From assembly GCF_016432865.1 (NCBI RefSeq), contig NC_067403.1:254944001-255008000 (forward strand): a stretch of 64,000 nucleotides of DNA, given 5' to 3'. Made by a program: the position numbers and the translations under genes. This document shows positions 10,196-50,900 of this stretch, one piece after another. The DNA is from Antechinus flavipes. Its lineage: Eukaryota. Under the pieces are notes generated by a model. It saw only the letters and a list, made by a program, of their open reading frames with translations. It was not told the DNA's origin and did no database searches. Position 1 is the stretch's first letter. The number at the start of each line of letters is the position of its first letter.

Positions 10196-11450
10196 CCACC
10201 AAAGTGATTCCTTAAAGGCCAGGTCTGACCGGGGGCTCTTGTCTCCAGGAGCAGATCGGAACCTGTTTGGTTTTCAAAACCTGCCCCTCTTCCCTTTCTC
10301 ATCCATCACTAGTCTTGAGGAAGACCCTCCCTCCCCTTCTGCCGAATCAGGGAATTTTTTTCAGTATCTGCCGCCCTTACAACCCTGTGCATCTTTTGTT
10401 CGCTGTCCGCCCATCAGACGCTGGGCTTCTTTCTGCGAGGGCAGGGGCGACTTGGGGGGCTCGGCACGTCGTATTTTGCTCAAAGCTACGGGGGAGTGGC
10501 CTGCCCAAAGAAGTGATGGACGGGATTGCCTGGGGACTGGCAAGGGAGGCGGGTCTAGGGCCTGAAGGTTTTTGGACACCAAGTAGAGGAGTTTGTATTT
10601 GCTCCTGGAAATCACAGGAAACCATTGGAGTTTATTAAGAGACTGTGTGCATGTGCGGTGCGTGTGCCATCTTCAGACCTGAATGCAGGAACACCAGTTT
10701 GGCGGACTGGGGCAGGTGGGCCCAGCCGCCGGCAATTTCAGTGGACCGGAAAGTGGAGGCACCAAACATAGACAGCTTGTGAGCCTCTCAACGTAAGGAG
10801 AGATGGGGCTGCCGTGGGCGCGGATGGAAGGTCAGCGAGGGCCTCTTTAAGGCTGGAGAAGCCCCGGCCGCGTTGGTCGGGAGGGGGACAGCGCGTAGAG
10901 ACGGGAGATTGACAAGGGGACGAAGCTCTGCAGGAGAGGGGCAGGGAGCAAGGAAGGCTTGCCGGAACGGGAGGGGACGAGACAAGGAGCCCTGCATCAA
11001 GGAATACGGGCGGAGGAGGGCGCCCTCGCCAGTCCGGGCGGGAGGAGCGGCTGCGCCAAGTGTGCCCTGGCAGCCGAGGGCTCAGACTACGTTCTTAAGC
11101 CGCACTCCCGGGCTCGGCCCGGCACTCCCTCCTCCCACGCCACCTGTCAATCACAAGCTAAATCGCTGCGACACTCTGCCGCTGGGGCAATCCCGGGAGA
11201 CAGAAGGCGGCCAGGCCAATGACCGACAAGCCCCGCAGGGTTCAGCCCCGCCCCCTTCGGCGCTTCGCCCCCGCCGCCGGCTGCGTGCAAATTTACTGGT
11301 TGCCCCGCGGACATGCCCGCCCCACCGCTCCCCCTTCATGACGGGAGCTGAGTGGCTGGCAGTCGCTAGGCCCCGCCCCCTAGCGCAATGAAAACCCCTG
11401 CAGGGGCGTGGCTTCAGCCGGGGGCGGGCCATACGCGGATCCGGGCGGGG

Positions 11451-14400: not shown

Positions 14401-14907
14401 AAGGGGGGCAGCCACCACAGCTGGGGGTCCCTGAGGCCTGGCTCGGGGCGGGGAGAGGCAGGAGGGAGTCAGACGGAGGGGGGGCCATCCCAGTTGGGTC
14501 ACTTCCTAGCTCCGATTCCTTTTCCTCCTGGGGCCTGTGAAATGACAGGGCTGCACTAAAGCTCCCCAAAGCCGCCAAGTGCTTGGGGTGGGGTCCGAGC
14601 GGTGACCTTCCTTGGTGACCTTGACCTCTCTCCCCGCTCCCTGTCCTAGGCGGCAGAGCTGCTCCTGGATGACTCCCTCGTGCCCCTGTTTGGGAACCAT
14701 CGTCTGAAGAGGTGAGCGCTCCGGAGCCCTCTATGGGCAGTCCCCCTTCCCCTCCCCCCATGTGCCCCTAGGCGTCCCCTGACCCCTGTGACCATCTGCA
14801 GGTTCTCCATGGTGGTGCAGGATGGCGTTGTGAAAGCCCTGAACGTGGAGCCAGACGGCACAGGTCTCACCTGCAGCCTCGCCCCCAACCTCCTGTCGCA
14901 GCTCTGA
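11451..14907 (+). CDS. PRDX5: Peroxiredoxin 5, 6 exons, 206-aa mitochondrial form; short form from ATG 11583
   Basis: Exons 11451-11597, 13695-13829, 14091-14222, 14324-14362, 14650-14711, 14802-14907. Contains an MGLAG... presequence, MAPIKVGD, peroxidatic FTPGCSKTH, resolving GLTCSLAP and C-terminal PTS1 SQL*. Confidence 0.98.
12574..13150 (+). repeat. Compound (GT)n then degenerate (GA/GACA)n purine-rich tract in PRDX5 intron 1
   Basis: ~570 bp almost entirely G/A with interspersed C on the + strand. Confidence 0.95.
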
Positions 14908-14985: not shown

Positions 14986-15279
14986 ACATGTCTGTTCGCT
15001 GACTCTCGGTCTCCTTTCTGCTGGGGGCCATCTCAGGGCCTGCCCTCTGGGGGGGTTACACTCTGCAGGAGACAATGGCCAGCCAGTCTCCTACGCGGAC
15101 ACGTCCATAGGTCATAGACAGCACAAGGGATGGCGCAGGCCCAAGGGGACAAGTCTCCTCTTGGCGTGGGCGACCAGGGTGGGCTCTGGGGAGACCAGTC
15201 TCAGGTGGATCTGGCGTCACCAGAGCGCCTGCGGTGGGGGCGAGCTTCCTCCCATGGCCATCCATCCTCCGCCATTGCT

Positions 15280-24349: not shown

Positions 24350-25320
24350 AATGTGTGGTGCCCCCTCCCCTATCCACACTCCGGCCACCATATTTGATAC
24401 CCCATCTTCCCTCCTCAAGTTATCGTCCCCTCTTATTCCTCCCTTTTTCAGTCAAACTCCCTGAAAAAAGCCGTCTGCTTCTACTACTTCCTCTCCTCTC
24501 ATTCCTTAGGCCTTCGCAATCCGGCTTCCTATTGCCATCCTGAGCCTCCCAACTCAACGGAAACCGCCCTCCCCAGAGTAACCAACGATCTCTTCATTGC
24601 CACATCTGGCTCCCGTGAGCCTTGGACCCCACTGATCATCACTCCCTCCTCCATTTTCTCGGGTTCTCCTTCTATCTGCCCACTCCTCCGCCTGTTTTGT
24701 GGCTCTCGGGCCATACAAGCTCCCAACTCTGTCCCAAGTTGTCCAAGGCTCTATCTTTCTCTCCCCTCTCTTGGTGATGTCATGAGCTCCCTTGGGTCTC
24801 ATTATCATGTCTATGCTGTTGACGCTGAGATCTATATATCTAGCCCCAGTCTCTCCCCTGAGCTCCAGTCCCTCATCATCCATTGCCCACTGGGCATTTC
24901 AAACTGGATGTCCCAGAGACATCTTCAAATCAACACGTTCAAAACAGTATTCGTCAGCTTGCTCTCCAAACTCTTCCAGATTTCCCCGATTCTGTCGAAG
25001 GCCCCGCCATGATTCAACTTTGTCTTGACCCAAGCATCACCCTCGATTCCTCACTCCCCCTCACTCCCCAAAGCTCAGCAGCTGACAGATCTCACCATTT
25101 CTATTTCGGTAGCGTCTCTCACAAGCGACGCGTCTCCACTTCCATAGACATTCTATTCCAGGCCTTTATCTCCTTCTCTCTTGGACTGTTTCAGCCTCCT
25201 GACTGCTCTCCCGGATTCTAATGTCTCCTGACCCCAGTAAATCCCACACTGCTGCCCGAGTGAATGAATATCCCTACATGGCACCCTATTTAAGAAACTC
25301 CAGTAACTCCCTCATCCTTT
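24350..25320 (+). mobile_element. L2 ORF2 fragment
   Basis: Typical L2 motifs, e.g. CATTTCAAACTGGATGTCCCAGAGACATCTTCAAATCAAC. Confidence 0.65.
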
Positions 25321-25553: not shown

Positions 25554-25688
25554 NNNNNNNNNNNNNNNNNNNNNNNNNNNNNNNNNNNNNNNNNNNNNNN
25601 NNNNNNNNNNNNNNNNNNNNNNNNNNNNNNNNNNNNNNNNNNNNNNNNNNNNNNNNNNNNNNNNNNNNNNNNNNNNNNNNNNNNNNNN
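25554..25688. other. Assembly gap (135 N)
   Basis: Run of n. Confidence 1.
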
Positions 25689-29146: not shown

Positions 29147-30299
29147 GGGAAAGGTGCAGTTCTCTGAGTGAATCAAAATTGTGGTAGTTCCAAAGAAGTA
29201 TGAGATGCGTAAACATTCACGTGGACTATTTGTGCCTAACATGTGACAGAGCCTTCCAAGCTCATGTTGGTCTGATCAGCCATAGTTGGACACACTGTAC
29301 TTTGACCCTGACATAGTGTCCTCTTTTTGGTCCTCTTCGATCAGGAAGAACAACCACCAACCAGGCCTTGGCGCAGACTCTGACAACAACCACGGTTTCT
29401 TTAGGGGGGGATGCTTCCTCCTTGGTGGAGGAATTTGCCACCAAAATTGATAAGAACTCCTTGTCTGTTGATCTTTCAAAGTTCACAAGGCTATGATCTG
29501 GCCAGTCCTATCTCTGGATACTTCGGTCTTTTCTTGGGATAGCTTCTCTTGCTTCTCTGCCTATTTCCATTCCCAGTGAGTGAATGGTCCAGCATTTCTG
29601 TTTATGTGACAGAAGGAGCGAAGGCTGGGAAGTCTAGAGATGCATTTTTCCCTTCTCTTCTCCCTCCAAATGATTTCTTTTCAGGAACTTGCAGCTCAGC
29701 TCAATCTCATATGGCTCAGCTCCCATATCTGGAGTTCCTTCCCCTTGGATCCACGGGCTTTGAACTAGCTTGATTTTAGACACAGGTTCACCGATTTTCT
29801 TCAACCAATCCCAAGATATTTCCTGTATTGAATCATCTATTTTCATGCAATGACCCAAAGCCACTACGATCCTCTCAAATTCATCCAGGACTGATTCATG
29901 GTCTTCACTTCTGATTGATCCTTTGAGATGTCTGGATCTTCTAGGATATATTGGGGTGGAGGTGGATCCCTTCCATTTATAGTTCTACGTGTATTTTCTG
30001 TCTCTCCTGTTAGATTGAAAACTTCTTGCTGTAGGAATTGTTTTGTTTTGTCTCTGTCTGGAATAGGGGAAGACTATGAATGCTTGTCAACTCATTGTTC
30101 TCCTGTCTCCATGTTGTTCCGCCTCCCTTCCCACACCAACACCTCTTATTCCCTTCAAGAAGTCTTCTCAGATTTTCTCAGTTGTAGATAGTCTCCCCAC
30201 CCAACCCTTATCACTCCTTTTTTAAGGAAGGGGACTTGCACCTGTGATTTCCTTGAGGTAGAGAACTCCAGATCAGAGAACTCTAACAAGTGGAGTAGC

Positions 30300-37000: not shown

Positions 37001-40000
37001 TGGGAGGGTGGCGGGAGGGGAGGGGCCAGATCTGGGGGATGGGCGGAGTTAGTGAGAGGGGCTGGGGCCGAGTTCTCAGGGGTCTCCCAGGACCACAGTA
37101 TCTCCTCACAGCCTCCATCCCCCTTTCTCCAGGGAGGAGAAGGCTGAGGAGCTGTTGGACTCCCAAGGAGAGGTGCAGGGGCTGGAGGCCGAGATTCGGA
37201 GGCTGCGGCAGGAGGTAAGGTCCCCCTCCCCATCCCCCCCATCCGTTGCTGCTGCCTCTGGGGCATCCTCCTGCCCGGGCCGCCTGCTCTGCTTCTCCCT
37301 GCGCCCACTCCATCCCTGCCCCCAGGCCTGGCCTCCCTGCGGGACCTCCGGCCCCCTGCGCTGCCCCGGGCTCAGCCTCCCCCTCTCCGCAGACACAGAT
37401 GCTGTCGGGCCAGGCCAGGAGAGCCGCCGTGTACCGAGAGGAGGCAGAGACGCTCCGGGAGCGGGTCGGGCGCCTGCCCCGGCTGCAGGAGGAGCTGCGC
37501 AGGTGCCGGGAGAGGCTCCACGCCGCCGAGGCTTACAAGGGCCAGCTGGAGGTGAGAGCAAGGGAGAGGGGCTGGTCATTAAGCCAGGTCCAGGGGGAGT
37601 CCTTCATTTGACAGATGGGGAAACTGAGGCCCAGAGAAGTGATCTGTCTGAGGGCGCGGCTGATTTATCGCACTGCCTTTCTCAGGTGTCTCACTCTGGC
37701 TCAGGGGCTCAGGGGCAGCAGGGGTGATGGGTCGGCCAGAAAGCCGCGGGTCCCCCTCCTGGCTAGTGCTAGCCGGGAAGGGGGAGCAGATCCCAGTCAC
37801 ATCATGTATGGCAGGCTCTGCACATGTTCACCACCACTAAGTGGGAGCTACTTTATTATGTGTGGGGCCTGCCATGGGCCGAGCTGGCTGGTGGAGAGAA
37901 CACAAGAGCTGAAGCTGGAGGAGCGAGTTCTCGTCCGACTCTGCTGCTAGGGACACACAAGCCCTCTCCTCTCGGGACCTCGGTTTCCCCTTCTGCACGG
38001 TCGGGGGCTTGTAGTGGCCGTTCTCCAGGAGCAGGCCCGTTCCTGATCCGCTCCTTCCTCCCTAGGAGGAGCGGGCCCTGTCCGGAGCACTGGAGGCCGC
38101 CCGCGCGTTGCTGGAGGGGCAGCTGGACGCCGCCCGGGAGCGCTGCTCTCGTCTCCATGAGACCCAGAGGGAGAACCTCTTGCTGCGGGCCCGGCTCGGG
38201 GAGGCCCAAGTGGTGAGGGCAAGGTGACCCCGACCCTGGGTGGCTTCCCCACTGAGTGGCTCCTTTCTCCGTGACCCCCGGCCCAGACAGACACCAGGGG
38301 GCTTCTGGGTGCCGTGTGTGTGGGCCAAGGAGTCCTTTCTCTCTTGGGCGTCTCCAGGAGTTGGAATCCACCCGACAACAGCTGGACAAGCTGGTGGAGG
38401 AGAACGTGGAATTGGAGGCGGAGCTGAGCCGGACCTTGCGGCCCGGCCCCTGCTCTCCCGGGGATGGTGAGAGGGGTCTCCAGAGGGTAGAGGAGGGGGT
38501 GGGGAGCAGCCATTCAGTCTAGTGGGAAGATCCAGTGGGATCTGGAATCAAAGGACCATTTCCTTCCTTATCTCTTTCTGCCTGTACACCCTTGGGTAAC
38601 TCACTCAGCCCCTCCTGGCCTCAGTTTCCCCTACTGGAAAATTTGGTCTTAGCTTCTTAAATTTCTTTTACTCACTTTTTGCCTGAGAAATTTTACACGA
38701 CCCTGGATATGTATATATAAATATGGGCCCACACATCAAACATTTACCGATAATAAACCGTGATTTTGCGGCCCTCACATTCAGTCTGAGACCTCCTATG
38801 GGTAAGGAACCAGTTGCCGAAGCCGGGGTCTAGAAGAGCCTCTCCCGGCCAGAGCTGTACCGAGCAGTTTTGGCTCCTGGGCAAGCAGCAAGAACCCAGA
38901 TCGACTTTGTGACTCATGATGTGGGGAAAAATCACACCAGAAGTAGTTAGGACGGTTTTGGTCGAGCGGGAGGAGAGATCAGTGGCTATAGTGACTCATG
39001 GGTTACCGTAATGCTTCACAGTTGGCTATTATGAACAAGGTTCATTTTCTGTTTTTTTTTTTCCCCCCTGAGGCAATTGGGGTTAAGTGACTTGCCCAAG
39101 ATCACATAGCTAGGAAGTGTTAACGTCTGAGGCCAGATTTGAACTCAGGTCCTCCTGACTTCAGGGCTGGTGCTCTATCCACTGCGCCACCCAGCTGCCC
39201 CCTGTTTTCTGTTTTAACGAATTATTCTTGCTAAGCTGCAGATTCACTGGCTGCCAAGTTCATTTGTTTCTACGCAGTTGTTGTCGCTCTATCAATAAAA
39301 ACTTATTAAGTGTCGGGCACTGGGTTCAAGTTATGAGAGGTCATGGGTTCCATTTTTGCCAAATTTGGGTGCCCAAGAACGGGACTTTGGTGCCTTTCCT
39401 AGTCTAACTCTACCTCTAAATCCGAACCCTCCCTTTTCTGGGCTTTAGCCAAAGGGGTGAAGAGAGGGGAAGACATTGAGTTCCGGGCAGGGCTCAGTCT
39501 TCCTTGAGTGGCCACCAAGGACTCTGTGCCCGTTTGGCAGGGAGGGCTGCAGCTGTGGGCAGAGGGAGGGAAGCTGCCTCTGGGGAGTGGGGCTCTGGAG
39601 CTCTCAGCAGGTCCCGATGTTGCCCCCTTCTCCCTCCTATAGCGCCCCAGCCTTTCTGGGCCCCCTCCCTGCAGGATGAAGTGAGAGCAGTAGAGGCAGG
39701 GCGCCTGCGGAGCTTGGAGCAGGAGAACCGGGACCTGCGAGGTCAGCTTCAGGAGCTGAAGGCAGGGAGATGGAGCCAGGTATGTCAGTACCCGACCCAG
39801 TTCCCAAGACCCCTTGGCCCTATTTCCCGAACCTTGCCCTTCCCCTCTGGTGCCTTGCTACTTCTGGGTGTCTTTCCCAGCCTCCCTTGCCTGAGGTGGA
39901 AGATGAAGAATCAGAGATCGCCAGACTGGAGGAAACCCACCAGGTCTTGGGGCCTTTGGACGTTGCTCATGGCTGTGAAAAATCCCTGCCTCTCGCAGAA

Positions 40001-43000
40001 GGGCCTATGCTCCAGAACTCCGGGCCCTCACACTCCGCAGGGGCCCAGCCGGACGCCTCTGGGGAGGCAGAGAAGCCAGTCCGAGCTCAGGACCCGGACC
40101 CTTTGGCCTTGATCCCACCGCACCCGGAAGGGAAGCTTGTCCAAGAAGAGCTCCAAGGGAAAAGGCTAGAAGGGGAAATGGAGGCTGAGGCCGGGGACTT
40201 GAAAAGGAGGGTCTTAAGGGCCGAGCATGAATCTTTGGGACTGAGGCATGAGGGGCAGCCGGGGGACCAGCCTCCCAGTCCAAAGCTGGAGGCGATGGAG
40301 GGAGAGGAGGAACATGGAGGAAATGAGTCCCTGGTCCAAGACCAGAGACTAGAGTGTGAGCTCCAGGATGAGAAAGAGTCATTTCAAGAGGGGACAGTAG
40401 GGGAAGCTGGGGCCTGGGAAAGGGAACAACAGGCTCTGAAAGCGGAGATAGAGATTCTGAAGAGGGCTACGGAGGCTTTGGAGAAGGAACGGGAATCTTT
40501 GAAGGGAGAGGTGGAGGCTGGGGAGCAGAGGCTGAAGACCTTGAAGGCGAAACATGAAGCTCTGAGAGAAGAGCAAGAAGCCCAGGTTCAGAGACTGGAG
40601 GCTCTGGAAAGGGAGATAGAGAGCCTTCAGCAGGAGCGGGAGGCCCTTCGGGGTGAGCTGGAGGCCCAGGGGAAGAGGCTGGAGGCCCGGGGAGAGGAAG
40701 CTGCCCGACTTGGGGAGGAGCTGGCTTTGGCCAGGAGGGCTGAAGCGGAGGCACACTCTGAGGCTAAAGCTGAGGCTCAGGAACGAGATGGGCTTCGGAA
40801 GGCCCTAGAGGCTGCAGGGCGAGAATTGGAGGCTGCTGGGCGGGAACGAGAGGCTCTGGCAGAGGCTCTAGGAGCTGCTGGACGGGAACGAAGGCAATGG
40901 GAACGGGAGGGACCCAGGCTGCGGGCCCGGGCAGAGGTTGCTGAGCAAAAGCTGCTGGATCTGGAGAGTGAAGCACGAGCCTTGAGGGACCAGGCTGAAA
41001 AGGAGCGGCAGGTGATGGAGACAACGAGAGAGGTAATGGCACCTCATCAGCCACACCTCTGGTCTGAGGCCTGTTGGATCTCCACTCACTCTTTTTCTTC
41101 TTTTCCTTGAGGACCCCCAGCTCCTCCAGACTAGCCATGTCTCCTCTCTTCCTTCACCAAGCAGTGCCAGGTGGCGTAGATACAAGAGTGTTGGGTCCAG
41201 ACCTCGGCTCTATGATCAGCTCTGCCATTGACCAAATGGTTGACTTTGGACTGGTCATTTCCCATCAGGCCTCTGTTTCCCCATCTATACAATAGGAGAC
41301 TAGAATAGTTATTTTTCCCCCTAGCTTTTTTAGTTGTAAGCCCAATTAATTGATTTTCTCTATTTTATTTAAGTAAGCTTCTAGAGATAGAAAATTTCTC
41401 CTAATAACCACTTTGGCTGCATCCCACAAATTTTATGTCATCTCATGGTTGCCATTCTTTTGGATGAAATTATTGATTGTGTCTATGATTTGTTGTTTCA
41501 TTCTTTAGGATTAGATTATTTAGTTTCCAATTAATTTTTAGTCTTCCTTTCCCCTAGCCTTTTATTGCATGTGATTTTTATTGTGTCATGGTCTAAAAAC
41601 ATGCATTTACTATCTCTGCCTTTCTGCATTTGATTTTGAGGTTTTTATGTCCCAATACATGGTCAATTTTTGTATAAGTTCCATGAACCACCAAAAAGTA
41701 AACTCCTTTCTGTCTCCATTCAATTTTCTCCAAAGAGCTATCATATCTTTTCTAAAATTTTATTTACCTCCTTAACTTCTTTCTTATTTATTTTGTGGTT
41801 CAATTTATCTAGTTCTGAGAGAGCAAGGTTGAGATCCCCCACTAGTATAGTTTTCTGTTTATTACTTCTTTGGAGTACTCATAACTTCTCTAGGAATTTG
41901 GATGCTATACCACTTGGTGCATATATGTTTAGCATTGATATTGCTTCATCGTCTATGCTAACCTTTATCAAGATATAGTTTCTTTCCTTATCTCTTTTAA
42001 TTAGATCAACTTTTACTTTCTCTGGATCTGAGATCAGGATGGCTACCCCTGCCTTTTTTTTTACTTCACCTGAGGCATAATAGATTCTGCTTCAGCCTTT
42101 TATTTTTACTCTGTATGTCTCACTCTGCTATAAATGTTTTTTATAAACAACATAATGTAAGATTCTGGCTTTTAACCACTTCTTTTTATGGGAGAGTTCG
42201 TCCCATTTATATTCACAGTTAAAATAACTAATTTTGTATTTCCTGCCCTTTTATTTACCCCAAGTTATGCTTTCCTTTTTTTCCTTTTCCCCTTCCCTCC
42301 TCTCCAGTATTTTGCTTCTGTCCACCACCTCCTTCAAACTGCCCTCCCCCTTTACAGCACCCCCTTTCTTGTACCTTTCTTTTATTACTTCTGTTTTCCC
42401 TTCTATTAGTCTCCCCATTTCCTTTCCCCTTCCCCCTCCCACTTCTCTATAAAGTGAGACAAGTTTCTCCGTGAAACCAAATATTAGACTAGTTCTTTTT
42501 TAAGAAAATGTATTTTCATTCTGAACTTAACATATTAAAAACATACTTAACATGCTAAAAAGAAATAAGCATTTCTACATACTAAAAGGACTGAAAAAAA
42601 GTCTTCCTATCTCTTGTTATGTCCAGCTTGTCTTTTCTTTTTAAGTATATAACACATTCAGCCTGTAGCTTTCAAAGCTGTCCTTCTTGTCTGTGCTTCC
42701 TTGTGGCCTTTCTTTAGTTCTCTTTCTTTGTATTTTAAAAAAGAAATGCCTCAATGACCTTCTTTACCTTCTCCTTCCCTTCCTGACTCTCTTCTGTCCC
42801 TTCTTCTCCCTTTTCCTTTTCTGTCACTTCCTCTTCCTCCCTTTCCCTTTCCCCTCATCTCTTCTTCCCTCCTTCCCTCCCTTCATTTCCTCCAATCCAC
42901 TTTTGTATAGATAGCTCTTGTTCAGAAGGTTTTCCTTACAGAAGGGAAATTTGCTTCTCTGCCGTCTTCCTTTCCTTTTTGTCTTTTAGGTCTAAGCAGA

Positions 43001-43533: not shown

Positions 43534-46500
43534 GAACATGGCCCCATTCCTCCCTCTTTAATTCAGTCAATTAGTTATAAACATGCATTAAGTGCTCACT
43601 GCATGCCTGGCACTGTGCTAAGCCCTGGTAGTTTGCTTGGGCCTCAGGGTAGTGAGGTGCACAAGGCAGGGACTTCTGGCTTCATTTTATAGACAGGGAA
43701 ACTCAGGCTCTGAAGGTCATAGAATGTCAGGGCCAGAACGGGCCTTGAGGGAAATCAACTCACCACAGCCTCTCCCTTGAAAGACTCCCTGGAGACTTGA
43801 TGATAAAGGTCCCGCAGGCTGTGAGCCGCATCTTGAAATATCCAGTCCAAGGCTTCCCCCTGGCTCCCGGCCCTCTCTGTTCCTTCACTGTCCTTCGGTC
43901 CTGCTTTCTTCCTGCAGGTCTCTGCCCTCCCTTTCCTGACAAGTTCCCCTAAACTAAACTGAATGGAATGGTGCTTGACCACCTTCCCTTCCTGGTCCTA
44001 ACCTCCTAGTCTTTGATCACGTAGGAGCTGCAGGGGAGAGTGGTCGAGAGTCAGCAGCTGAAGAGCCAGCTGGAAGAGCTGCGCTTGGAGCTGGAGCAGG
44101 TGAACCAGGATCGGGACAAGCAGCTGAGGGAGCAGGAGAAGCAGCAGGAGAGGTGGGTCTGGGCCCAGGAAGGAGCTGGAGAATGGAGACAGGAAAGAGG
44201 GGAGAGGCAGAAAGAGGAAAGATCAGCTCTGTGCTGGGAGAAGGTTGCCAAGGGAAGGACATTTCAATTTGACGGTGGGATAAACCACTTGAGCTATCCC
44301 AGTGTGGAACGGGCTGCTTCGGAGATAGCGAGTCATCCATCCCTGGAGGTGTTCACCTCTGCATGGCCGCTCAGTGGGCATGTTTGAGGGGGATTCCTAT
44401 CCCAGTACGGTCCCTCTTGCTCTGCAACACTTGAGTCGGGGCCTGGGGCTTTGGGCTGGGAGGGAGATGGCAGAGGGTTTAGCCTTAGAGAGCTGAGATT
44501 GAGGTTTGGAAGTGAGCGCGAGAGGGATGAGTGATGTCCTTCCTCCCCCATCCCCGGACAGGGCGTCCCAAGCTCTGCAAAAGCGTCTGGAAGAAGAGAC
44601 TCGCGTTGCCCTCGCTACCAAGGATGAGGAAATGATGGCTCTAAAGGCCAGGATCCAAGGCCTGGAGGATCAGGTGAGAAGCCGTGACCCTACAGTCACG
44701 GCAGAGTCAGCCTCCACCCCAAAGCCTCCCCTTCTCCTCCTTTGATTTTTTTCCTTACCCCTGTCTGGCCCTTCATTTTTTAAATTTAATTTTTAAAATT
44801 ATTTCTACATCATTACATATGACGTCAATTTCTTGACGTAATACCTCCCCCTTCACGATCATCGTCACAGAAAAGTTCAGCCAAGACAAGCGAGACGGTG
44901 AGCTTGCCTGACGGTGTCTTCGGTGTCCAGCCCCTCTTGCCCTTCACCTCTCTGCAAGGGCGGGAGAGGCTTCGGCTGCTTTCTAGGCCCTAACGGTTTT
45001 TCAGCTGCTTCTCGGGGAACCGTTTTTAACGGTCTCTTCATTTAAGTTGTTGCTCATTCTTTTGGCTTTGCTTACTTCCCTCTGAATCAGTCCATCCAGA
45101 TCGCATGCTTCTCAGAAGCCCTCAGTCATCCCTCCATTTTCTTAGGCTTAAAGTTTAGGTGGCTAGGTGGCTCAGCAGATACAATGCCAGGCCTGGAGTT
45201 CAAATGCAGCCTCAGTTGTATGCTAGCTGCATGACCCTAGGCAAGTGACTTTACTCTGCTTGCCTCAGTTTCCACATCTGTAAAATGAGATGAAGAAGAA
45301 CTTGAGAATTTTTGCCACAAAACCCCATTTCCAGTGATGAGGGGCCTGATCCGCTGGTGGGCGGCCCCCTTTGTAGGGTCAATGACATTCAGTGGTTTAT
45401 TACGATTCCTCATTGAGCTGATCCATGGGTTGATTGATAAGCATGTTATTGTTTCTATGCGTCAGACACCGTGTTAGGTGCCGGAATCAGGTCTTCCCTC
45501 AAGCTGGCATTTTATTGGACGAGACAGTTTATAGATATGTGTCTGTGTGAATGCCTCCGTGTACATTATGCATGTGGACGTGCACATAGAACAGACCAGA
45601 CGAGACGCACTTGAGGGGGAAGTGAGGCTGGGGGGGAGGGGGAGCCCAGAGAACTTTGAAGGGTCTGCGCATGCTGGGGAGGGGGGAGTTTAGGGGAGAG
45701 AACACTCCAAGCCTGGGAGACAGGGAAGGCCAAGGGGACAAGACTGGGTGTGGAGGGGGCTTAATTCTAGTGCGGGGAGGAGAAAGCTGGGGCGGGGGGC
45801 AGGGAGTGGGGAGTTTTCAAGGCCGAAGCATGGGGCTTGTCAGGATTGCTGAGAAGGGACCTGAGTTTTTGGTAGATCCCTTTGGCCACAGAATGAAGGA
45901 TGCACTGGCCTGGCCTGGGAGGTAGGGTGGCTCAATAAGAGCCTACTGCCATAGGACAGGTGAGAGATGATGGGAGCCTGAGCCCAGGCTTGTCTAATGG
46001 GGTGCAGGATCTTGATCTCTGGAAGGCTGCTCTCCTTCCTTTTGGCTCCCCCTCCTCCCTCTAGTGCTGACCCCGGGGGCTGTCCTCCTCAATCCCCCCT
46101 CCTCCCTCCAATGCTGACCTCGTGGGCTGCTCTCCTTGGTCCCCCCCCTCCAGTGCTGACCCCATGGGCTGCTCTCCTTGGTCCCCCCTCCTCCCTTCAC
46201 TGCTGACCCCATGAGCTGTCCTTCTCCTTGGTCCCCCCTCCTCCCTCCAGTGCTGACTTCATGGGCTGCTCTCCTTGGTCCCACCTCTTCCTTCCCCCCT
46301 CCTCCCTCCAGTGCTGACCCTGTGGGCTGCCCTCCTTGGTCCCCCCTCCTCCCTCCAGTGCGGACCTCGTGGGCTGCTCTCCTTGGTCCCACCTCTTCCT
46401 TCCCCCCTCTTCCCTCCAGTGCTGACCCCATGGGCTGCCCTCCTTGGTCCCCCCTCCTCCCTCCAGTGCTGACCCCGTAGGCTGCCCTCCTTGGTCCCCC

Positions 46501-47897
46501 CTCCTCCCTCCAGTGCTGACCCCATGAGCTGTCCCTCTCCTTGGTCCCCCCCTCCCTCCAGTGCTGACCCCGTGGGCTGCTCTCCTGCAGCTCCAGCACC
46601 AGGCTTCCTTGAGGCTGAAGGCAGAGGACCCCCCTGGGCCAGGGAGAGCCGCAGAGGCCCCCGCTGCAGCCGAGGCGGTCCAGGAGACCCTGAGTGGGCG
46701 GCTCATCGCGGTGGAGCGCAGTGTGAGTTGGGGCTTGGCAGGGCTGTGCTGGGACGGGTGAGTTGACGGAACCTAACCCTACTTCTCCTCCCTGGACAGA
46801 ACGCAGCCCTGGCGGCCGAGAAGGCTTCTCTGCAGGGGCAGCTGAGGCAGTTGGAGGGCCAGCTGGGGACTCTGCAGGGCCGGGTCCAGGAGTTGCAGCT
46901 GCAGAGCAGCCGGGCTCAGGAGCACAGCAGCCACCTCCAGGTGAGTCCCCGGCCCAGCCAGGGAGGACCCTTCTGCCCTCTGGGACGGTCCCTTTCTTCC
47001 TCTCTTCCCTGTCCCCGCACAGTCAGTCAGGGGGGCTGGGCGCTGCTCACTAGGTGACTTTTGGCACATGTTTTGATGAGCCTTCATTTCCAGGTGACTG
47101 CTGGATTCCCTATGACCCCATGCTCATCTTCAGCCTTCACCTTCTCATCCTTCTCATCTCCTCTCTGTGCCACGCTCCTCTCTTTTCCGCCCTCCCTCTT
47201 CCTTTCTCTCTCCATCAAGGGAAACATAAGATCTAGGAATAAAGGTGGGTCTCAGTGGACCTCCGTCTTGATCTGACAGCCTCTGGATACTTTTTTCTCC
47301 CTTCTTTTAAAACTTTTTTTTTTATTTTTCAAGTAACTAGTATTTAAAAAACAAATCTGTCCCTTCTCTCTCTCTCCCTTTCCTCCATCAAACTTTTTTT
47401 CCTTTTTTCTGAGACAATTGGGGTTAAGTGACTTGCCCAGGATCACACAGCTAGGAAGTGTTAAGTATTTGAGGGAAGATTTGAACTCAGGTCTGGTCCT
47501 CTATCCATTGCACCCTCTAGCTGCCCCATTCAAACAAACTTTCAAAAATAAAGCAAAAACTTTACCAAAAATAAAACTCACCACATCAGAAACCATGTCT
47601 CTTTCTGCATTTGTCCCCTCTCAGGGAGGAGAATTTTGACATTTTCCTTCATTTGGCCTCGTGCCTTACCATTGTCTCCATCGGAGTTAGTTCTGAAGTC
47701 TCTCAAAGTCCTTTTTTTCTATAATATTGTCACTGTATAAAGTATCCTCCTGCCTCTGCTCTCTTTCTTCTGCTTCTGTTTGTACTACCCAGAATTCCCT
47801 GTAAATCTCTCATTAATTTTTTACACAATAGGATTCCACTCCCTATATCCACCACAATTTGTTTAGCGGTTCCCCAAGAGGAAATCCCTTTTTTGGT

Positions 47898-47936
<39 letters not shown>

Positions 47937-50900
47937 GCTACTTAAACACTTTTTTTGAACATATAGAGCCTTTCTCTCTTACTCTGACTTCTTTGGAGTA
48001 GAGGCATAGTAGCTAACTGGCTCCAGGGACATGTGGAGTTTGGTAATTGTTTTGGACATAGTTCCAAATTGCTTTCTCCAGTGATTGGACTCATAATTCA
48101 CAGCTCCACCAACGGGGCGTTAACATGCCTATTTTTCCACAGCCCCTCCAACATTTGTCATTTTCCTCTTTAATTACGTTGCTTCATCTGATAGGGGTGG
48201 GATGGACTTCAAATTTAATTTGTATTTCTCTAATTCTTACTGATGTAGAACATGGTTCTTAATAGCTTGAATTTCTTCCATAGGAAATTGCCCGCTCATA
48301 TCTCTTGATCGCTTACCTATTGAGGAAAGCCCCTCAGTGTTATAAATTTGAATCAGTTCTTGGAAATGAAACGTGTAGCATGATTTTTTCCCTTATTACT
48401 TTCCCCCTTTCTAATCATCACTATATTAAGTTTATGCAAAAAAATTAAATTTGCTATAATTCAAATTGTCCGGTTTATCTTGGGCTATCGTCTCCATCAT
48501 TTGTTTGGTCAGGAAGTCTTTTTGTTTCCATGGGTCCAAGAGGTAGTTTCTTCCTTGTTCATAAGGTGACTGTTAATGTCGAAGTCATGTATTCATTTGG
48601 AGCTTATTTTGGTATATGGTATATGTATACAGTCAGTCAGGGGGACTGGGCTCTGCCCAGGTAAAAGTAATTTCTGCTGTCTAGTTTTCCCAGAATTTTT
48701 TTGATGTGGATGAAATACTTTAATTATTATGGGATTGTGGTGGTCAATGTCTTTTTTTTTTTTAAATAAAGCCTTTTATTTTCAAAACATACGCACGGAT
48801 AATTTTTCACAAGATAATTGATAGCTTGGATTCTTGCTTCAAAAACCGCTTGTTTATATCCTTTGACCATTTATCTATTGGTTGAGAAATAGCTTTTATT
48901 GTTACAAATTTGAATCAATTCCTTTCATATTTTGGAAGTGAGAATTTTAAAACCGCACGGGTAATTTGACAACATTGACCCTTGTATAGCCTCATGTTGC
49001 AGATTTTCTCCTCCTTTCCCCCATTCCCCAGATGGCAAACAATTCAATATATATAAACATATTTATACAATTCTCTTGCTGCACGAGAGAAATCAGATCA
49101 AAAAAAGAAAGTAAATGAGTCAGAAAACAAAATACAAGCAAACAACAAAAAGAGTGAGCATGTTATGTTGTGGTCCACACTCCGTTCCTACAGTCCTCTC
49201 TCTTTCCATTTTTGTAAGATAGTTTCCCCAGTAACTGAGGTCTTTGAGTTTATGACATGATGCTTCTGTGTTTGTTTTCTTTTGTATGTGGTATACTTAA
49301 TCTGTTCTGCTTCATTTTTTTAAACCGATGGCCAATCATTTTAATGTCTACTGCTTTATGTTCCCATAATGCTGTGTTTGAGAACCTGCAATGATAGAAT
49401 CCCTTCCTATTTTTTTCATTATTGCCCTTGAGATTTTTGACTTTTTGTTTCTTCAAACACTTTTTTTCTTTTTAATTTTTTTGATGTGAATTTGGAACAG
49501 CACTGAATAAATTAGTTTAGATAATATTGTCATTTTTATTATGTTGACTCTTCCTACTCATGAGCAATTAATGTTTCTCTATCCAGGCTTCTTCCTTCCT
49601 TCCTTTCTTTCCTCCTCCTTTTTATTTTATGTTTTGAGATCGGGTCTCTTTATCTTGCCCAGGCTGGAAATACAGTGTCCTGATTCCACTTCTGATTGGC
49701 ACACAGACTTTGACCTACTCTGATTTCAACTGGGCTGTTTCACCCCTCCTTAGGCAGCCTGGTGCCCTTCCCCCAACAGTGACTCAACATTTTGTTGCCA
49801 GACTTGAGAAGCACATTTGCCTTAGCCCAGTGCAGCTTAGAACTCCAGAGCTTAAGTGATTTATAAACCTTGATTTCACCAGGAGCAGGATTATACAGCT
49901 GTGTCACCATCCCTGCAGGCCTCTATTTCTGCTAGAAATAGTCTAAGTATTTTCTAAGTATAAAATATTCTCTATTCTATGCTAAGATTTTTTAGAATCT
50001 TTCTATTCTAAGTATTTTATACTTTATAGAATAGAATAAAGAATATACTTTATTCTAAGTATATAAGGTATATAAAATACTTAGATAAAGCATATTCTTT
50101 ATTCTATTCTAAGATTTTTTAGAATCTTTCTATTCTAAGTATTTTATACTTTATAGAATAGAATAAAGAATATACTTTATTCTAAGTATATAAAATACTT
50201 AGATAAAGTATAATCTTTATTCTAGTCTAAGATTTTTTAGAATCTTTCTATTCTAAGTATTTTATACTTTATAGAATAGAATAAAGAATATACTTTATTC
50301 TAAGTATATAAAGTATATAAAATACTTAGATAAAGCATATTCTTTATTCTATTCTAAGATTTTTTTAGAATCTTTCTATTCTAAGTATTTTATACTTTAT
50401 AGAATAGAATAAAGAATATACTTTATTCTAAGTATATAAAGTATATAAAATACTTAGATAAAGCATATTCTTTATTCTATTCTAAGATTTTTTTAGAATC
50501 TTTCTATTCTAAGTATTTTATACTTTATAGAATAGAATAAAGAATATACTTTATTCTAAGTATATAAAGTATATAAAATACTTAGATAAAGTATAGTTTT
50601 TATTCTAGTCTAAGATTTTTTTAGAATCTTTCTATTCTAAGTATTTTATACTTTATAGAATAGAATAAATAATATACTTTATTCTAAGTATATGAAGTAT
50701 ATAAAATACTTAGATAAAGTATAGTCTTTATTCTATTCTAAGATTTTTTTGGAATCTTTCTATTCTAAGTATTTTATAATTTCTATATTTATTTCAAGTG
50801 GATTTCTCTTCCTAGTTCTTCTTGTTATGTTTTGTTGGTTTAATGGATTAGAAAGGTTGTGATTTATTTGGATTTATCTTACAGCCTTCAACTTTGCTGA

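What the first reader, a model, noticed from the sequence alone, without database searches (positions are those of the whole stretch)
46025..46590. Minisatellite that multiplies the CCDC88B exon-17 splice acceptor into an array of stop-coupled decoys
Seen: the real acceptor (TGCTGAC...CTCTCCTGCAG|, 46562-46590) is a truncated last unit of the repeat. Each upstream unit has a branch-point consensus (CTGAC), a long pyrimidine tract and, in nine cases, a terminal YAG (46064, 46153, 46250, 46311, 46358, 46419, 46466, 46513, 46561). Exon 16 ends in phase 0, so eight decoys read TGC TGA (Cys-stop) at once, and the ninth reaches a TGA two units later. The decoy pyrimidine tracts look stronger than the real one. 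Established: premature stops in internal exons trigger NMD. Inference: copy number could tune CCDC88B dosage through unproductive splicing, or the repeat carries a silencer that lets the spliceosome skip nine good-looking sites.
Basis: partly seen in the sequence, partly recalled or inferred. Interest (0 to 1): 0.72.

Follow-up and report, generated by a model that had tools for sequence, protein, structure and literature searches.

The report
Branch-site minisatellite before a CCDC88B exon
In the yellow-footed antechinus, a 47-bp tandem repeat has copied the branch site, pyrimidine tract and an upstream AG of one CCDC88B intron ten times, giving nine look-alike splice acceptors that would all end in a stop; it is a young, lineage-specific example of a known kind of repeat, and I found no evidence that the copies are used.

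Summary
Window 46025-46590 holds a lead piece, ten full units of 42-61 bp and a 29-bp truncated unit that ends at the real acceptor. Eight read Cys-stop; the ninth stops after 37 codons.

The window is the Antechinus flavipes reference assembly, and the gene is CCDC88B. The array is not conserved. Tasmanian devil has one upstream CAG+TGCTGAC, Sminthopsis has one full unit, and Dromiciops has a single TAG+TGCTGAC in a 185-bp intron. So the repeat multiplied an old upstream YAG with the branch site, not the real AG.

All fourteen marsupial CCDC88B protein models read, bar one old automatic model, join the exons at the real acceptor. That includes the A. flavipes RefSeq model.

By simple counts the decoy tracts beat every working acceptor of the gene. 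But they sit 37-56 nt from their branch A (real site: 24), have T at +1, and are followed by pyrimidine-rich, intron-like sequence.

It is most likely a passenger minisatellite with silent or NMD-cleared decoys, like the F7 IVS7 repeat and amphioxus "mirages". The scan earlier noted a donor-side analogue (TMEM199) elsewhere in this genome.

The parts
44562..44673 (+). It ends in phase 0 (...IQGLEDQ), and the donor GTGAGA starts at 44674.
   Evidence: Sequence and translation. It aligns to residues just before the junction in 14 marsupial CCDC88B proteins.
44674..46590 (+). The 1917-nt intron. It carries a marsupial-type SINE at about 45150-45300 and ends in the minisatellite.
   Evidence: The orthologous introns are 855 nt in Sarcophilus, 1431 nt in Sminthopsis and 185 nt in Dromiciops.
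46025..46064 (+). Lead piece of the array: the 3' part of a unit, ending in CTCTAG. This is decoy 1, which has no consensus branch site of its own. Its start, GGCTGCTCTCCTT, recurs inside every unit and before the real AG.
   Evidence: Homologous lead pieces occur in Sminthopsis (ends TAA), Sarcophilus (ends CAG) and Dromiciops (ends TAG).
46065..46561 (+). Ten full units of 42-61 nt. Each has TGCTGAC (branch-site consensus; unit 7 has TGCGGAC), then a G-triplet, then a C-rich pyrimidine tract. Eight of the ten end in CAG. The decoy AGs end at 46153, 46250, 46311, 46358, 46419, 46466, 46513 and 46561.
   Evidence: Unit identities: u6/u8/u9 96%, u5/u7 93%, u4/u10 94%, and u1 and u2 66-85% to the other units. 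Units 5+6 and 7+8 form a 108-bp higher-order repeat.
46562..46590 (+). Truncated last unit: TGCTGAC with the branch A at 46567, a short tract, and the real acceptor AG at 46589-46590. The branch A lies 24 nt before the first exon base.
   Evidence: The same branch site plus acceptor is conserved in Sarcophilus (L001 11644-11674), Sminthopsis (L002 12202-12231) and Dromiciops (L003 15554-15580). A recognisably related TGCT..GA motif lies about 26 nt before the echidna acceptor.
46591..46723 (+).
   Evidence: It is 100% identical to residues 1105-1149 of the A. flavipes RefSeq protein P0133.

Best explanation
This is a boundary minisatellite, a young tandem expansion of the 3' end of one CCDC88B intron in the Antechinus lineage.

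Origin. The ancestral intron end in Australidelphian marsupials already read: C-rich tract, YAG, TGCTGAC (branch site), short tract, CAG, exon. A short direct repeat (GGCTGCTCTCCT) lies on both sides of the YAG-plus-branch-site piece. I infer that slippage or unequal exchange between those copies duplicated that piece once in the dasyurid ancestor and then to ten full units in Antechinus.

What it creates. Each copy carries a branch site, a long C-rich tract and usually a CAG. That gives nine cryptic acceptors. All lead to a premature stop, because the branch-site TGA falls in frame after a phase-0 exon.

Which site is used. The productive acceptor is still the ancestral, exon-proximal one.

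Why it wins (inferred, not shown):
- The real AG is 24 nt from its branch A, against 37-56 nt for the decoys.
- Exon sequence follows it directly, while each decoy is followed by pyrimidine-rich, G-triplet-bearing, intron-like sequence.
- Every decoy has T at +1.

Any decoy-spliced RNA would be a target of nonsense-mediated decay. I take the array for a neutral or slightly costly passenger, not an evolved dosage device.
For: Shown:
- The array is real and local.
- The window is identical to A. flavipes GCA_016432865.2, a 100x PacBio assembly (PMC9290055).
- Copy number among relatives: Sarcophilus has one CAG+TGCTGAC upstream of the real site, Sminthopsis one full unit, Dromiciops one TAG+TGCTGAC. 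Tandem Repeats Finder finds no array in Sarcophilus or Sminthopsis.
- The junction ...LE.Q|LQ.Q... is kept in 13 of 14 marsupial CCDC88B proteins and isoforms, including the A. flavipes RefSeq model.
- Spacing, +1 base and tract counts are.
- Purine content after each site is 22-36% for decoys and 48% for the real exon. It is 42-72% for 18 real exons of the gene.
- The decoy AG is not better conserved than other unit columns: 2 of 10 units have lost it, and they are the oldest 5' units.

From the literature:
- Human F7 IVS7, IFI6 (6-16), CBS, LMNB2 and PDGF minisatellites reiterate a donor. Only the exon-proximal site or sites are used (PMC1557585).
- Amphioxus 'mirages' reiterate either boundary without disturbing normal splicing in RT-PCR (PMC3087553).
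- The first AG downstream of a branch site is chosen, except AGs close to it (PMC9284458).
Against: - No RNA data were seen.
- Protein annotations cannot show NMD-targeted isoforms, so decoy use at any level is not excluded.
- By pyrimidine content the decoys exceed every working acceptor of the gene. The tract score is 10.3-13.1 against a natural maximum of 10.2 and 6.0 for the real site.
- C-rich tracts are the norm for working acceptors here, and some are known to be driven by poly(C)-binding proteins (PMC4797308).
- Seven decoys have a perfect branch site.
- No MaxEntScan or SpliceAI score was available.
- The set of 18 natural acceptors was hand-derived from tblastn boundaries, so one or two may be misplaced.
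Confidence: 0.6

Rival explanations
1. Unproductive-splicing rheostat. A substantial share of pre-mRNAs splice to decoys and are destroyed by NMD, so array length sets CCDC88B dosage.
For: - Seven decoys have a consensus branch site, an 18-20/20 pyrimidine tract and a CAG.
- All nine give a premature stop many introns upstream of the last junction.
- Would-be exon lengths of 162-304 nt for the four nearest decoys are within the normal range.
- Minisatellites are often length-polymorphic (PMC3087553, PMC1557585).
Against: - The array is lineage-specific and the decoy AGs show no extra conservation.
- In every studied donor-side analogue, the distal pseudo-sites stay silent.
- The decoys have longer branch-to-AG spacing, T at +1 and intron-like downstream sequence.
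- Neither polymorphism nor RNA usage could be tested here.
Confidence: 0.2
2. Protein-binding platform. The C-rich tracts and G-triplets of the units bind hnRNP K/PCBP, PTB or hnRNP H/F. These mask the decoys, or mark the region as intron, and so enforce use of the last site. Array length could then also affect splicing efficiency or retention of this intron.
For: - Each unit has 1-4 runs of three or more C, and usually one GGG, in the 50 nt after its AG.
- Poly(C)-binding proteins act on C-rich tracts (PMC4797308).
- The gene tolerated a proximal YAG next to the branch site in all four Australidelphian species examined.
Against: - This rests purely on motifs. No binding data exist for this species.
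- In F7 no autonomous intronic element was needed to silence the pseudo-sites.
- PCBP binding to C-rich tracts is reported to enhance, not repress, the adjacent acceptor.
- The RNA has no unusual structure: z = +1.37, and 18 of 20 shuffles fold at least as well.
Confidence: 0.12
3. Assembly artefact. The copy number, or the array itself, is an error of the long-read assembly.
For: Only one assembly of this species was available, and the window and L004 are the same sequence. Tandem repeats can be miscounted.
Against: - The array is 566 bp, far below PacBio read length, and coverage was 100x with short-read polishing.
- The units are individually distinct.
- One to two homologous units occur at the same place in two other dasyurid assemblies.
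Confidence: 0.03

Closest known systems
Human F7 intron 7 37-bp VNTR (Borensztajn et al. 2006, PMC1557585), and the donor-side minisatellites it lists in IFI6 (6-16), CBS IVS13, LMNB2 and PDGF intron 4
   Same: A minisatellite abuts an exon-intron junction and reiterates a splice signal several to many times. The pseudo-sites are functional-looking, and the exon-proximal site is the one used. Use of the other sites usually breaks the reading frame.
   Different: Those arrays repeat the 5' splice site and start inside the exon, so the pseudo-sites are identical to the real one. Here the 3' side is repeated: branch site, tract and AG. The array stops 4 nt short of the real AG, and the decoy AGs are copies of an older upstream YAG, not of the real acceptor. 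A 5'-to-3' scan from the exon cannot explain the choice on the 3' side.
Amphioxus 'mirages' (Adh3; globin genes BflGb6 and BflGb9; PMC3087553)
   Same: These are minisatellite-like tandem duplications of an intron-exon boundary. BflGb6 includes the acceptor side. Many units keep AG/GT signals, copy number differs between haplotypes, and RT-PCR shows regular splicing is undisturbed.
   Different: Mirage units are 10-160 bp and include exon sequence. The antechinus units are purely intronic. The host is a cephalochordate, not a mammal.
NMD-coupled 'poison' splice sites (regulated unproductive splicing, as in SR-protein genes; from general knowledge)
   Same: An alternative site introduces a premature stop well upstream of the last junction.
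   Different: Those elements are typically highly conserved and autoregulated. This array is lineage-specific and shows no extra conservation of the AGs. Its use is unproven.
Donor-side minisatellite in TMEM199 of the same genome (the scan's earlier finding s1-180297)
   Same: Same genome and the same kind of architecture: a splice site copied about nine times into the intron, each copy followed by a stop.
   Different: It is on the donor side and was reported as persisting across dasyurids. I did not re-examine that locus.

Membership tests
Splice-site-reiterating boundary minisatellite (F7 IVS7 type / 'mirage') | Tandem array of 10-160-bp units | tested here: met
   Units of 42-61 bp, about 11 copies, TRF score up to 557.
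Splice-site-reiterating boundary minisatellite (F7 IVS7 type / 'mirage') | One end of the array coincides with the exon-intron junction, so the authentic splice signals belong to a unit | tested here: inconclusive
   The last, truncated unit supplies the branch site and half of the tract of the real acceptor and ends 4 nt before the junction. The real AG (TGCAG) and the exon are not part of the unit.
Splice-site-reiterating boundary minisatellite (F7 IVS7 type / 'mirage') | Pseudo-sites are copies of the authentic site | tested here: not met
   The decoy AGs (CTCCAG|T) are copies of an ancestral upstream YAG next to the branch site. It is present once in Sarcophilus, Sminthopsis and Dromiciops. 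They are not copies of the real TGCAG|C.
Splice-site-reiterating boundary minisatellite (F7 IVS7 type / 'mirage') | Only the exon-proximal site is used physiologically | not testable with these tools
Indirect support only: the A. flavipes RefSeq protein and 12 other marsupial models use the proximal site.
Splice-site-reiterating boundary minisatellite (F7 IVS7 type / 'mirage') | Length polymorphism (VNTR) | not tested
   Only one assembly of the species was available; L004 is the same sequence as the window. Between species the copy number differs (0-1 full units against 10).
Regulated unproductive splicing (poison 3' splice site coupled to NMD) | The alternative site yields a premature stop more than about 50 nt upstream of the last exon junction | tested here: met
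   The stop falls in codon 2 for eight decoys and codon 38 for one. At least ten coding exons lie downstream in the window.
Regulated unproductive splicing (poison 3' splice site coupled to NMD) | The alternative junction is seen in RNA and stabilised when NMD is blocked | not testable with these tools
   No reads could be laid, and no transcript-derived protein fragments were found.
Regulated unproductive splicing (poison 3' splice site coupled to NMD) | Evolutionary conservation of the poison element | tested here: not met
   The array is absent from Sarcophilus, Sminthopsis and Dromiciops. Only the single proximal YAG next to the branch site is shared by the four Australidelphian species, and it is absent in echidna.

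The most novel reading that the evidence does not exclude
The array could be a natural 3'-side counterpart of the F7 experiment. Seven fully equipped upstream acceptors, with stronger tracts than any working acceptor of the gene, would be overridden by position alone. Alternatively, they would be used in proportion to copy number, making CCDC88B (a T-cell regulator, PMC4267237) a VNTR-dosed gene in a marsupial genus known for male death after mating (PMC9290055). Either outcome would bear directly on how mammalian spliceosomes choose among tandem branch-site and acceptor modules.
Probability: 0.12. Interest if true: 0.65.

Novelty: new member of a known kind. Interest (0 to 1): 0.36.

Why it matters
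Arrays that repeat a splice signal are rare natural experiments on splice-site choice. The donor-side case, F7, gave the 'exon-proximal site wins' rule. I found no studied mammalian acceptor-side case; the searches turned up only the amphioxus mirages.

This locus offers ten near-identical branch sites with nine AGs in a gene expressed in immune cells, and the genome paper reports 106 A. flavipes RNA-seq samples. One junction count would show whether position, spacing or tract strength rules on the 3' side, and whether such repeats carry a cost through NMD. If the decoys are silent, as I expect, it is a tidy but ordinary example of minisatellite birth at an intron end.

Tried and rejected
They were, however, inside the whole-window file used in local scripts (tblastn/blastn against the window) and inside a composition profile.
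- Word search with the 384-aa large exon. The 29 hits cover only its C-terminal coiled-coil third and contain no exon-16 or exon-17 sequence, so they gave no junction evidence.
- Word search with P0133:1000-1200, to catch transcript-derived ORF fragments. No hits.
- RNA structure hiding the decoys. Rejected: z = +1.37.
- Dispersed repeat or transposon origin of the unit. Rejected: the unit occurs nowhere else in the window.
- Selection keeping the decoy AGs. Column counts show none, though the power is low.
- More outgroups. No DNA was served for Petaurus, Trichosurus or Dasypus. The X2 isoforms were not on record.
- MaxEntScan and SpliceAI were not available. I used counts and a tract score built from the gene's own acceptors instead.
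- Spliced model. I built no joined model of my own. For the junction I used stored NCBI proteins by reference.
- Masked N run. The run at 25554-25688 was left alone. Locus L004 holds letters there (L004 10925-11059), which I did not read.
Full report
**1. What is there**

Window 46025-46590 is a genuine minisatellite. Tandem Repeats Finder gives overlapping arrays over 46048-46586 with periods 47, 61, 108 and 155 and scores up to 557. A 19-nt core of the unit occurs 11 times, only here. Shuffles give 0.04 matches.

Cutting at TGC[T/G]GAC gives three kinds of piece:
- a 40-nt lead piece (46025-46064);
- ten full units of 42-61 nt (46065-46561);
- a 29-nt last unit (46562-46590) that ends in TGCAG at the exon.

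Units 1 and 3 have lost the AG, and unit 7 has TGCGGAC instead of TGCTGAC.

The units differ in age:
- Interior units are the most alike: u6/u8/u9 96%, u5/u7 93%, u4/u10 94%.
- The 5' units u1 and u2 are the most diverged, at 66-85% to the others.
- Units 5+6 and 7+8 form a 108-bp higher-order repeat.

**2. Gene and species**

- The flanking exons translate to ...IQGLEDQ (44562-44673, ending in phase 0) and LQHQASLRLKAED...VERS (46591-46723).
- A profile-free search with the 384-aa large exon (39881-41032) found a 1491-aa protein at 74% identity.
[quoted passage not shown] The marsupials among them were Petaurus, Trichosurus, Vombatus, Notamacropus, Sminthopsis, Dromiciops, Macrotis and Sarcophilus.
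- The 90% cluster of the Sarcophilus protein also holds the Antechinus flavipes RefSeq protein XP_051822879.1 (P0133). Its exons match the window at 99-100%.
- The locus encoding P0133 (L004, GCA_016432865.2, CM028222.1) is base-for-base identical to window 14630-60719 apart from the masked N run.

So the window is the A. flavipes reference assembly. That assembly was built from 100x PacBio reads with short-read polishing and Hi-C (PMC9290055). It is not human sequence.

**3. Which acceptor is the real one**

Thirteen of the fourteen marsupial CCDC88B proteins and isoforms join ...LE.Q directly to LQ.Q.SL..., the join made by the acceptor at 46590. These include the A. flavipes model and five Sarcophilus models.

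The exception (P0043) is an old automatic model. It carries eight residues (LLLGELFL) that I traced by eye to intronic sequence of the Sarcophilus locus at about L001 11151-11175.

The branch-site-plus-acceptor module is conserved in three other marsupials:

| Species | Locus coordinates |
|---|---|
| Sarcophilus | L001 11644-11674 |
| Sminthopsis | L002 12202-12231 |
| Dromiciops | L003 15554-15580 |

A related TGCT..GA motif sits about 26 nt before the echidna acceptor. The real acceptor is therefore ancestral.

**4. Where the array came from**

| Species | Intron length | State at the 3' end |
|---|---|---|
| Dromiciops | 185 nt | ...CCCTCTAG, then TGCTGAC, then 20 nt, then exon |
| Sarcophilus | 855 nt | one partial unit ending CCAG, then the TGCTGAC module |
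| Sminthopsis | 1431 nt | lead piece ending TAA, one full 47-nt unit almost identical to the antechinus consensus, then the last module |
| Antechinus | 1917 nt | lead piece, ten full units, then the last module |

Tandem Repeats Finder sees no array in Sarcophilus or Sminthopsis.

So a YAG placed 5 nt upstream of the branch A is old: it is in 4 of 4 Australidelphian species but absent in echidna. One duplication of the YAG-plus-branch-site piece dates to the dasyurid ancestor. The growth to ten full units happened on the Antechinus lineage.

The motif GGCTGCTCTCCT stands both at the start of the lead piece and just before the real AG, flanking the duplicated piece. I infer that slippage or unequal exchange between these copies seeded the repeat.

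The decoy AGs are copies of the old upstream YAG, not of the real acceptor AG.

**5. How good the decoys are**

Entering any decoy in phase 0 gives Cys-TGA at once for eight of them, and a TGA after 37 codons for 46358. The TGA is the TGA of the branch motif CTGAC; in the last unit its A, at 46567, is the putative branch A. In the other two entry phases the frame stays open for 3 to 75 codons or more. The stop coupling is therefore a by-product of phase, not a sign of design.

I derived 18 working acceptors of the same gene by hand from tblastn boundaries and compared them with the decoys:

| Feature | 18 natural sites | Real site (46590) | Decoys |
|---|---|---|---|
| Pyrimidines in 20 nt | mean 15.6 (9.6 C, 6.1 U) | 14 | 18-20 |
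| Tract score | maximum 10.2 | 6.0 | 10.3-13.1 |
| T at +1 | 0 of 18 | no (C) | all nine |
| Branch A to exon | not measured | 24 nt | 37-56 nt |
| Purine share, +1 to +50 | 42-72% | 48% | 22-36% |

Further points against the decoys:
- Only seven of the nine have their own consensus branch site.
- Three have an extra AG 7-8 nt after their branch A.

The array RNA is no more structured than shuffles (z = +1.37).

**6. Is there evidence of function?**

The terminal G of the decoy AG is one of the more variable unit columns: 2 of 10 units deviate. The five branch-motif columns show one deviation in total. With ten related units this test is weak. It gives no sign that AGs are kept or purged by selection.

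**7. RNA evidence**

The look-up of sequencing runs listed four runs on record as RNA that hold about a tenth of the sampled words, plus DNA holders.

They were part of the whole-window file in local scripts and in one composition profile, as listed under Tried and rejected.

Two word searches meant to catch transcript-derived ORF fragments gave nothing useful. Whether decoys are ever used remains open.

**8. Comparison with what is known**

- Minisatellites whose first unit spans an exon-intron boundary and reiterates the donor are described for human F7 IVS7, IFI6 (6-16), CBS, LMNB2 and PDGF.
- In F7, 50 constructs showed the pseudo-sites are functional, yet the exon-proximal site always wins. 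No intronic silencer is needed (PMC1557585).
- Amphioxus 'mirages' reiterate either boundary, acceptors included. They vary between haplotypes and do not disturb normal splicing in RT-PCR (PMC3087553).
- The scan has already noted a donor-side array in TMEM199 of this same genome. That note led me to the F7 paper.
- The present locus is an acceptor-side, purely intronic member of this kind, in a mammal.
- It fails the conservation criterion for a classical poison splice site.

**9. Verdict**

Most likely (about 0.6) it is a passenger minisatellite. Its decoys are silent, or their products are cleared by NMD, and the ancestral exon-proximal acceptor is favoured by spacing and exon context.

| Rival | Probability |
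|---|---|
| Dosage control through unproductive splicing | about 0.2 |
| Protein-binding platform | about 0.12 |
| Assembly error | about 0.03 |

A junction count in the RNA-seq samples reported for A. flavipes would settle it.

Noticed in passing
window 49960-50782: A second intronic tandem array. Its period is about 127 bp, judged from the self-match offsets, with roughly 6 copies at 92-95% identity. It lies in the long intron between the exons ending at 46940 and starting at about 51976.
   Followed up: no
window 15130-15234, 24509-24628, 29341-29463: The A. flavipes RefSeq protein P0133 (1633 aa) has about 134 extra N-terminal residues from three exons far upstream of the start used by the other marsupial orthologues (34032). 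These may be alternative first exons or an over-extended model.
   Followed up: no
L001 11560-11610 against window about 45466-46030: The Sarcophilus intron lacks some 560 bp that Antechinus and Sminthopsis share just upstream of the repeat. A devil-lineage deletion may have removed further units there.
   Followed up: partly
L001 about 11151-11175 (protein P0043): An old automatic Sarcophilus model replaces the first 17 residues of this exon by LLLGELFL, which reads from intronic sequence. This looks like an annotation artefact.
   Followed up: partly
window 46586-46602: The exon starts CAG|CTCCAG|CACCAG, so two further in-frame AGs lie 6 and 12 nt downstream of the real acceptor. They are possible small alternative acceptors, but no annotated isoform uses them.
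   Followed up: no
window 45150-45300; L001 11300-11440: A marsupial-type SINE lies in the same intron and is shared with Sarcophilus. It was the first hint that the window is marsupial.
   Followed up: no
window 14630-14907 (L004 1-278): The upstream neighbour gene product carries AhpC-TSA/Redoxin domains, which suggests a PRDX5-like gene.
   Followed up: no
The tool said this is no evidence of anything.
   Followed up: no
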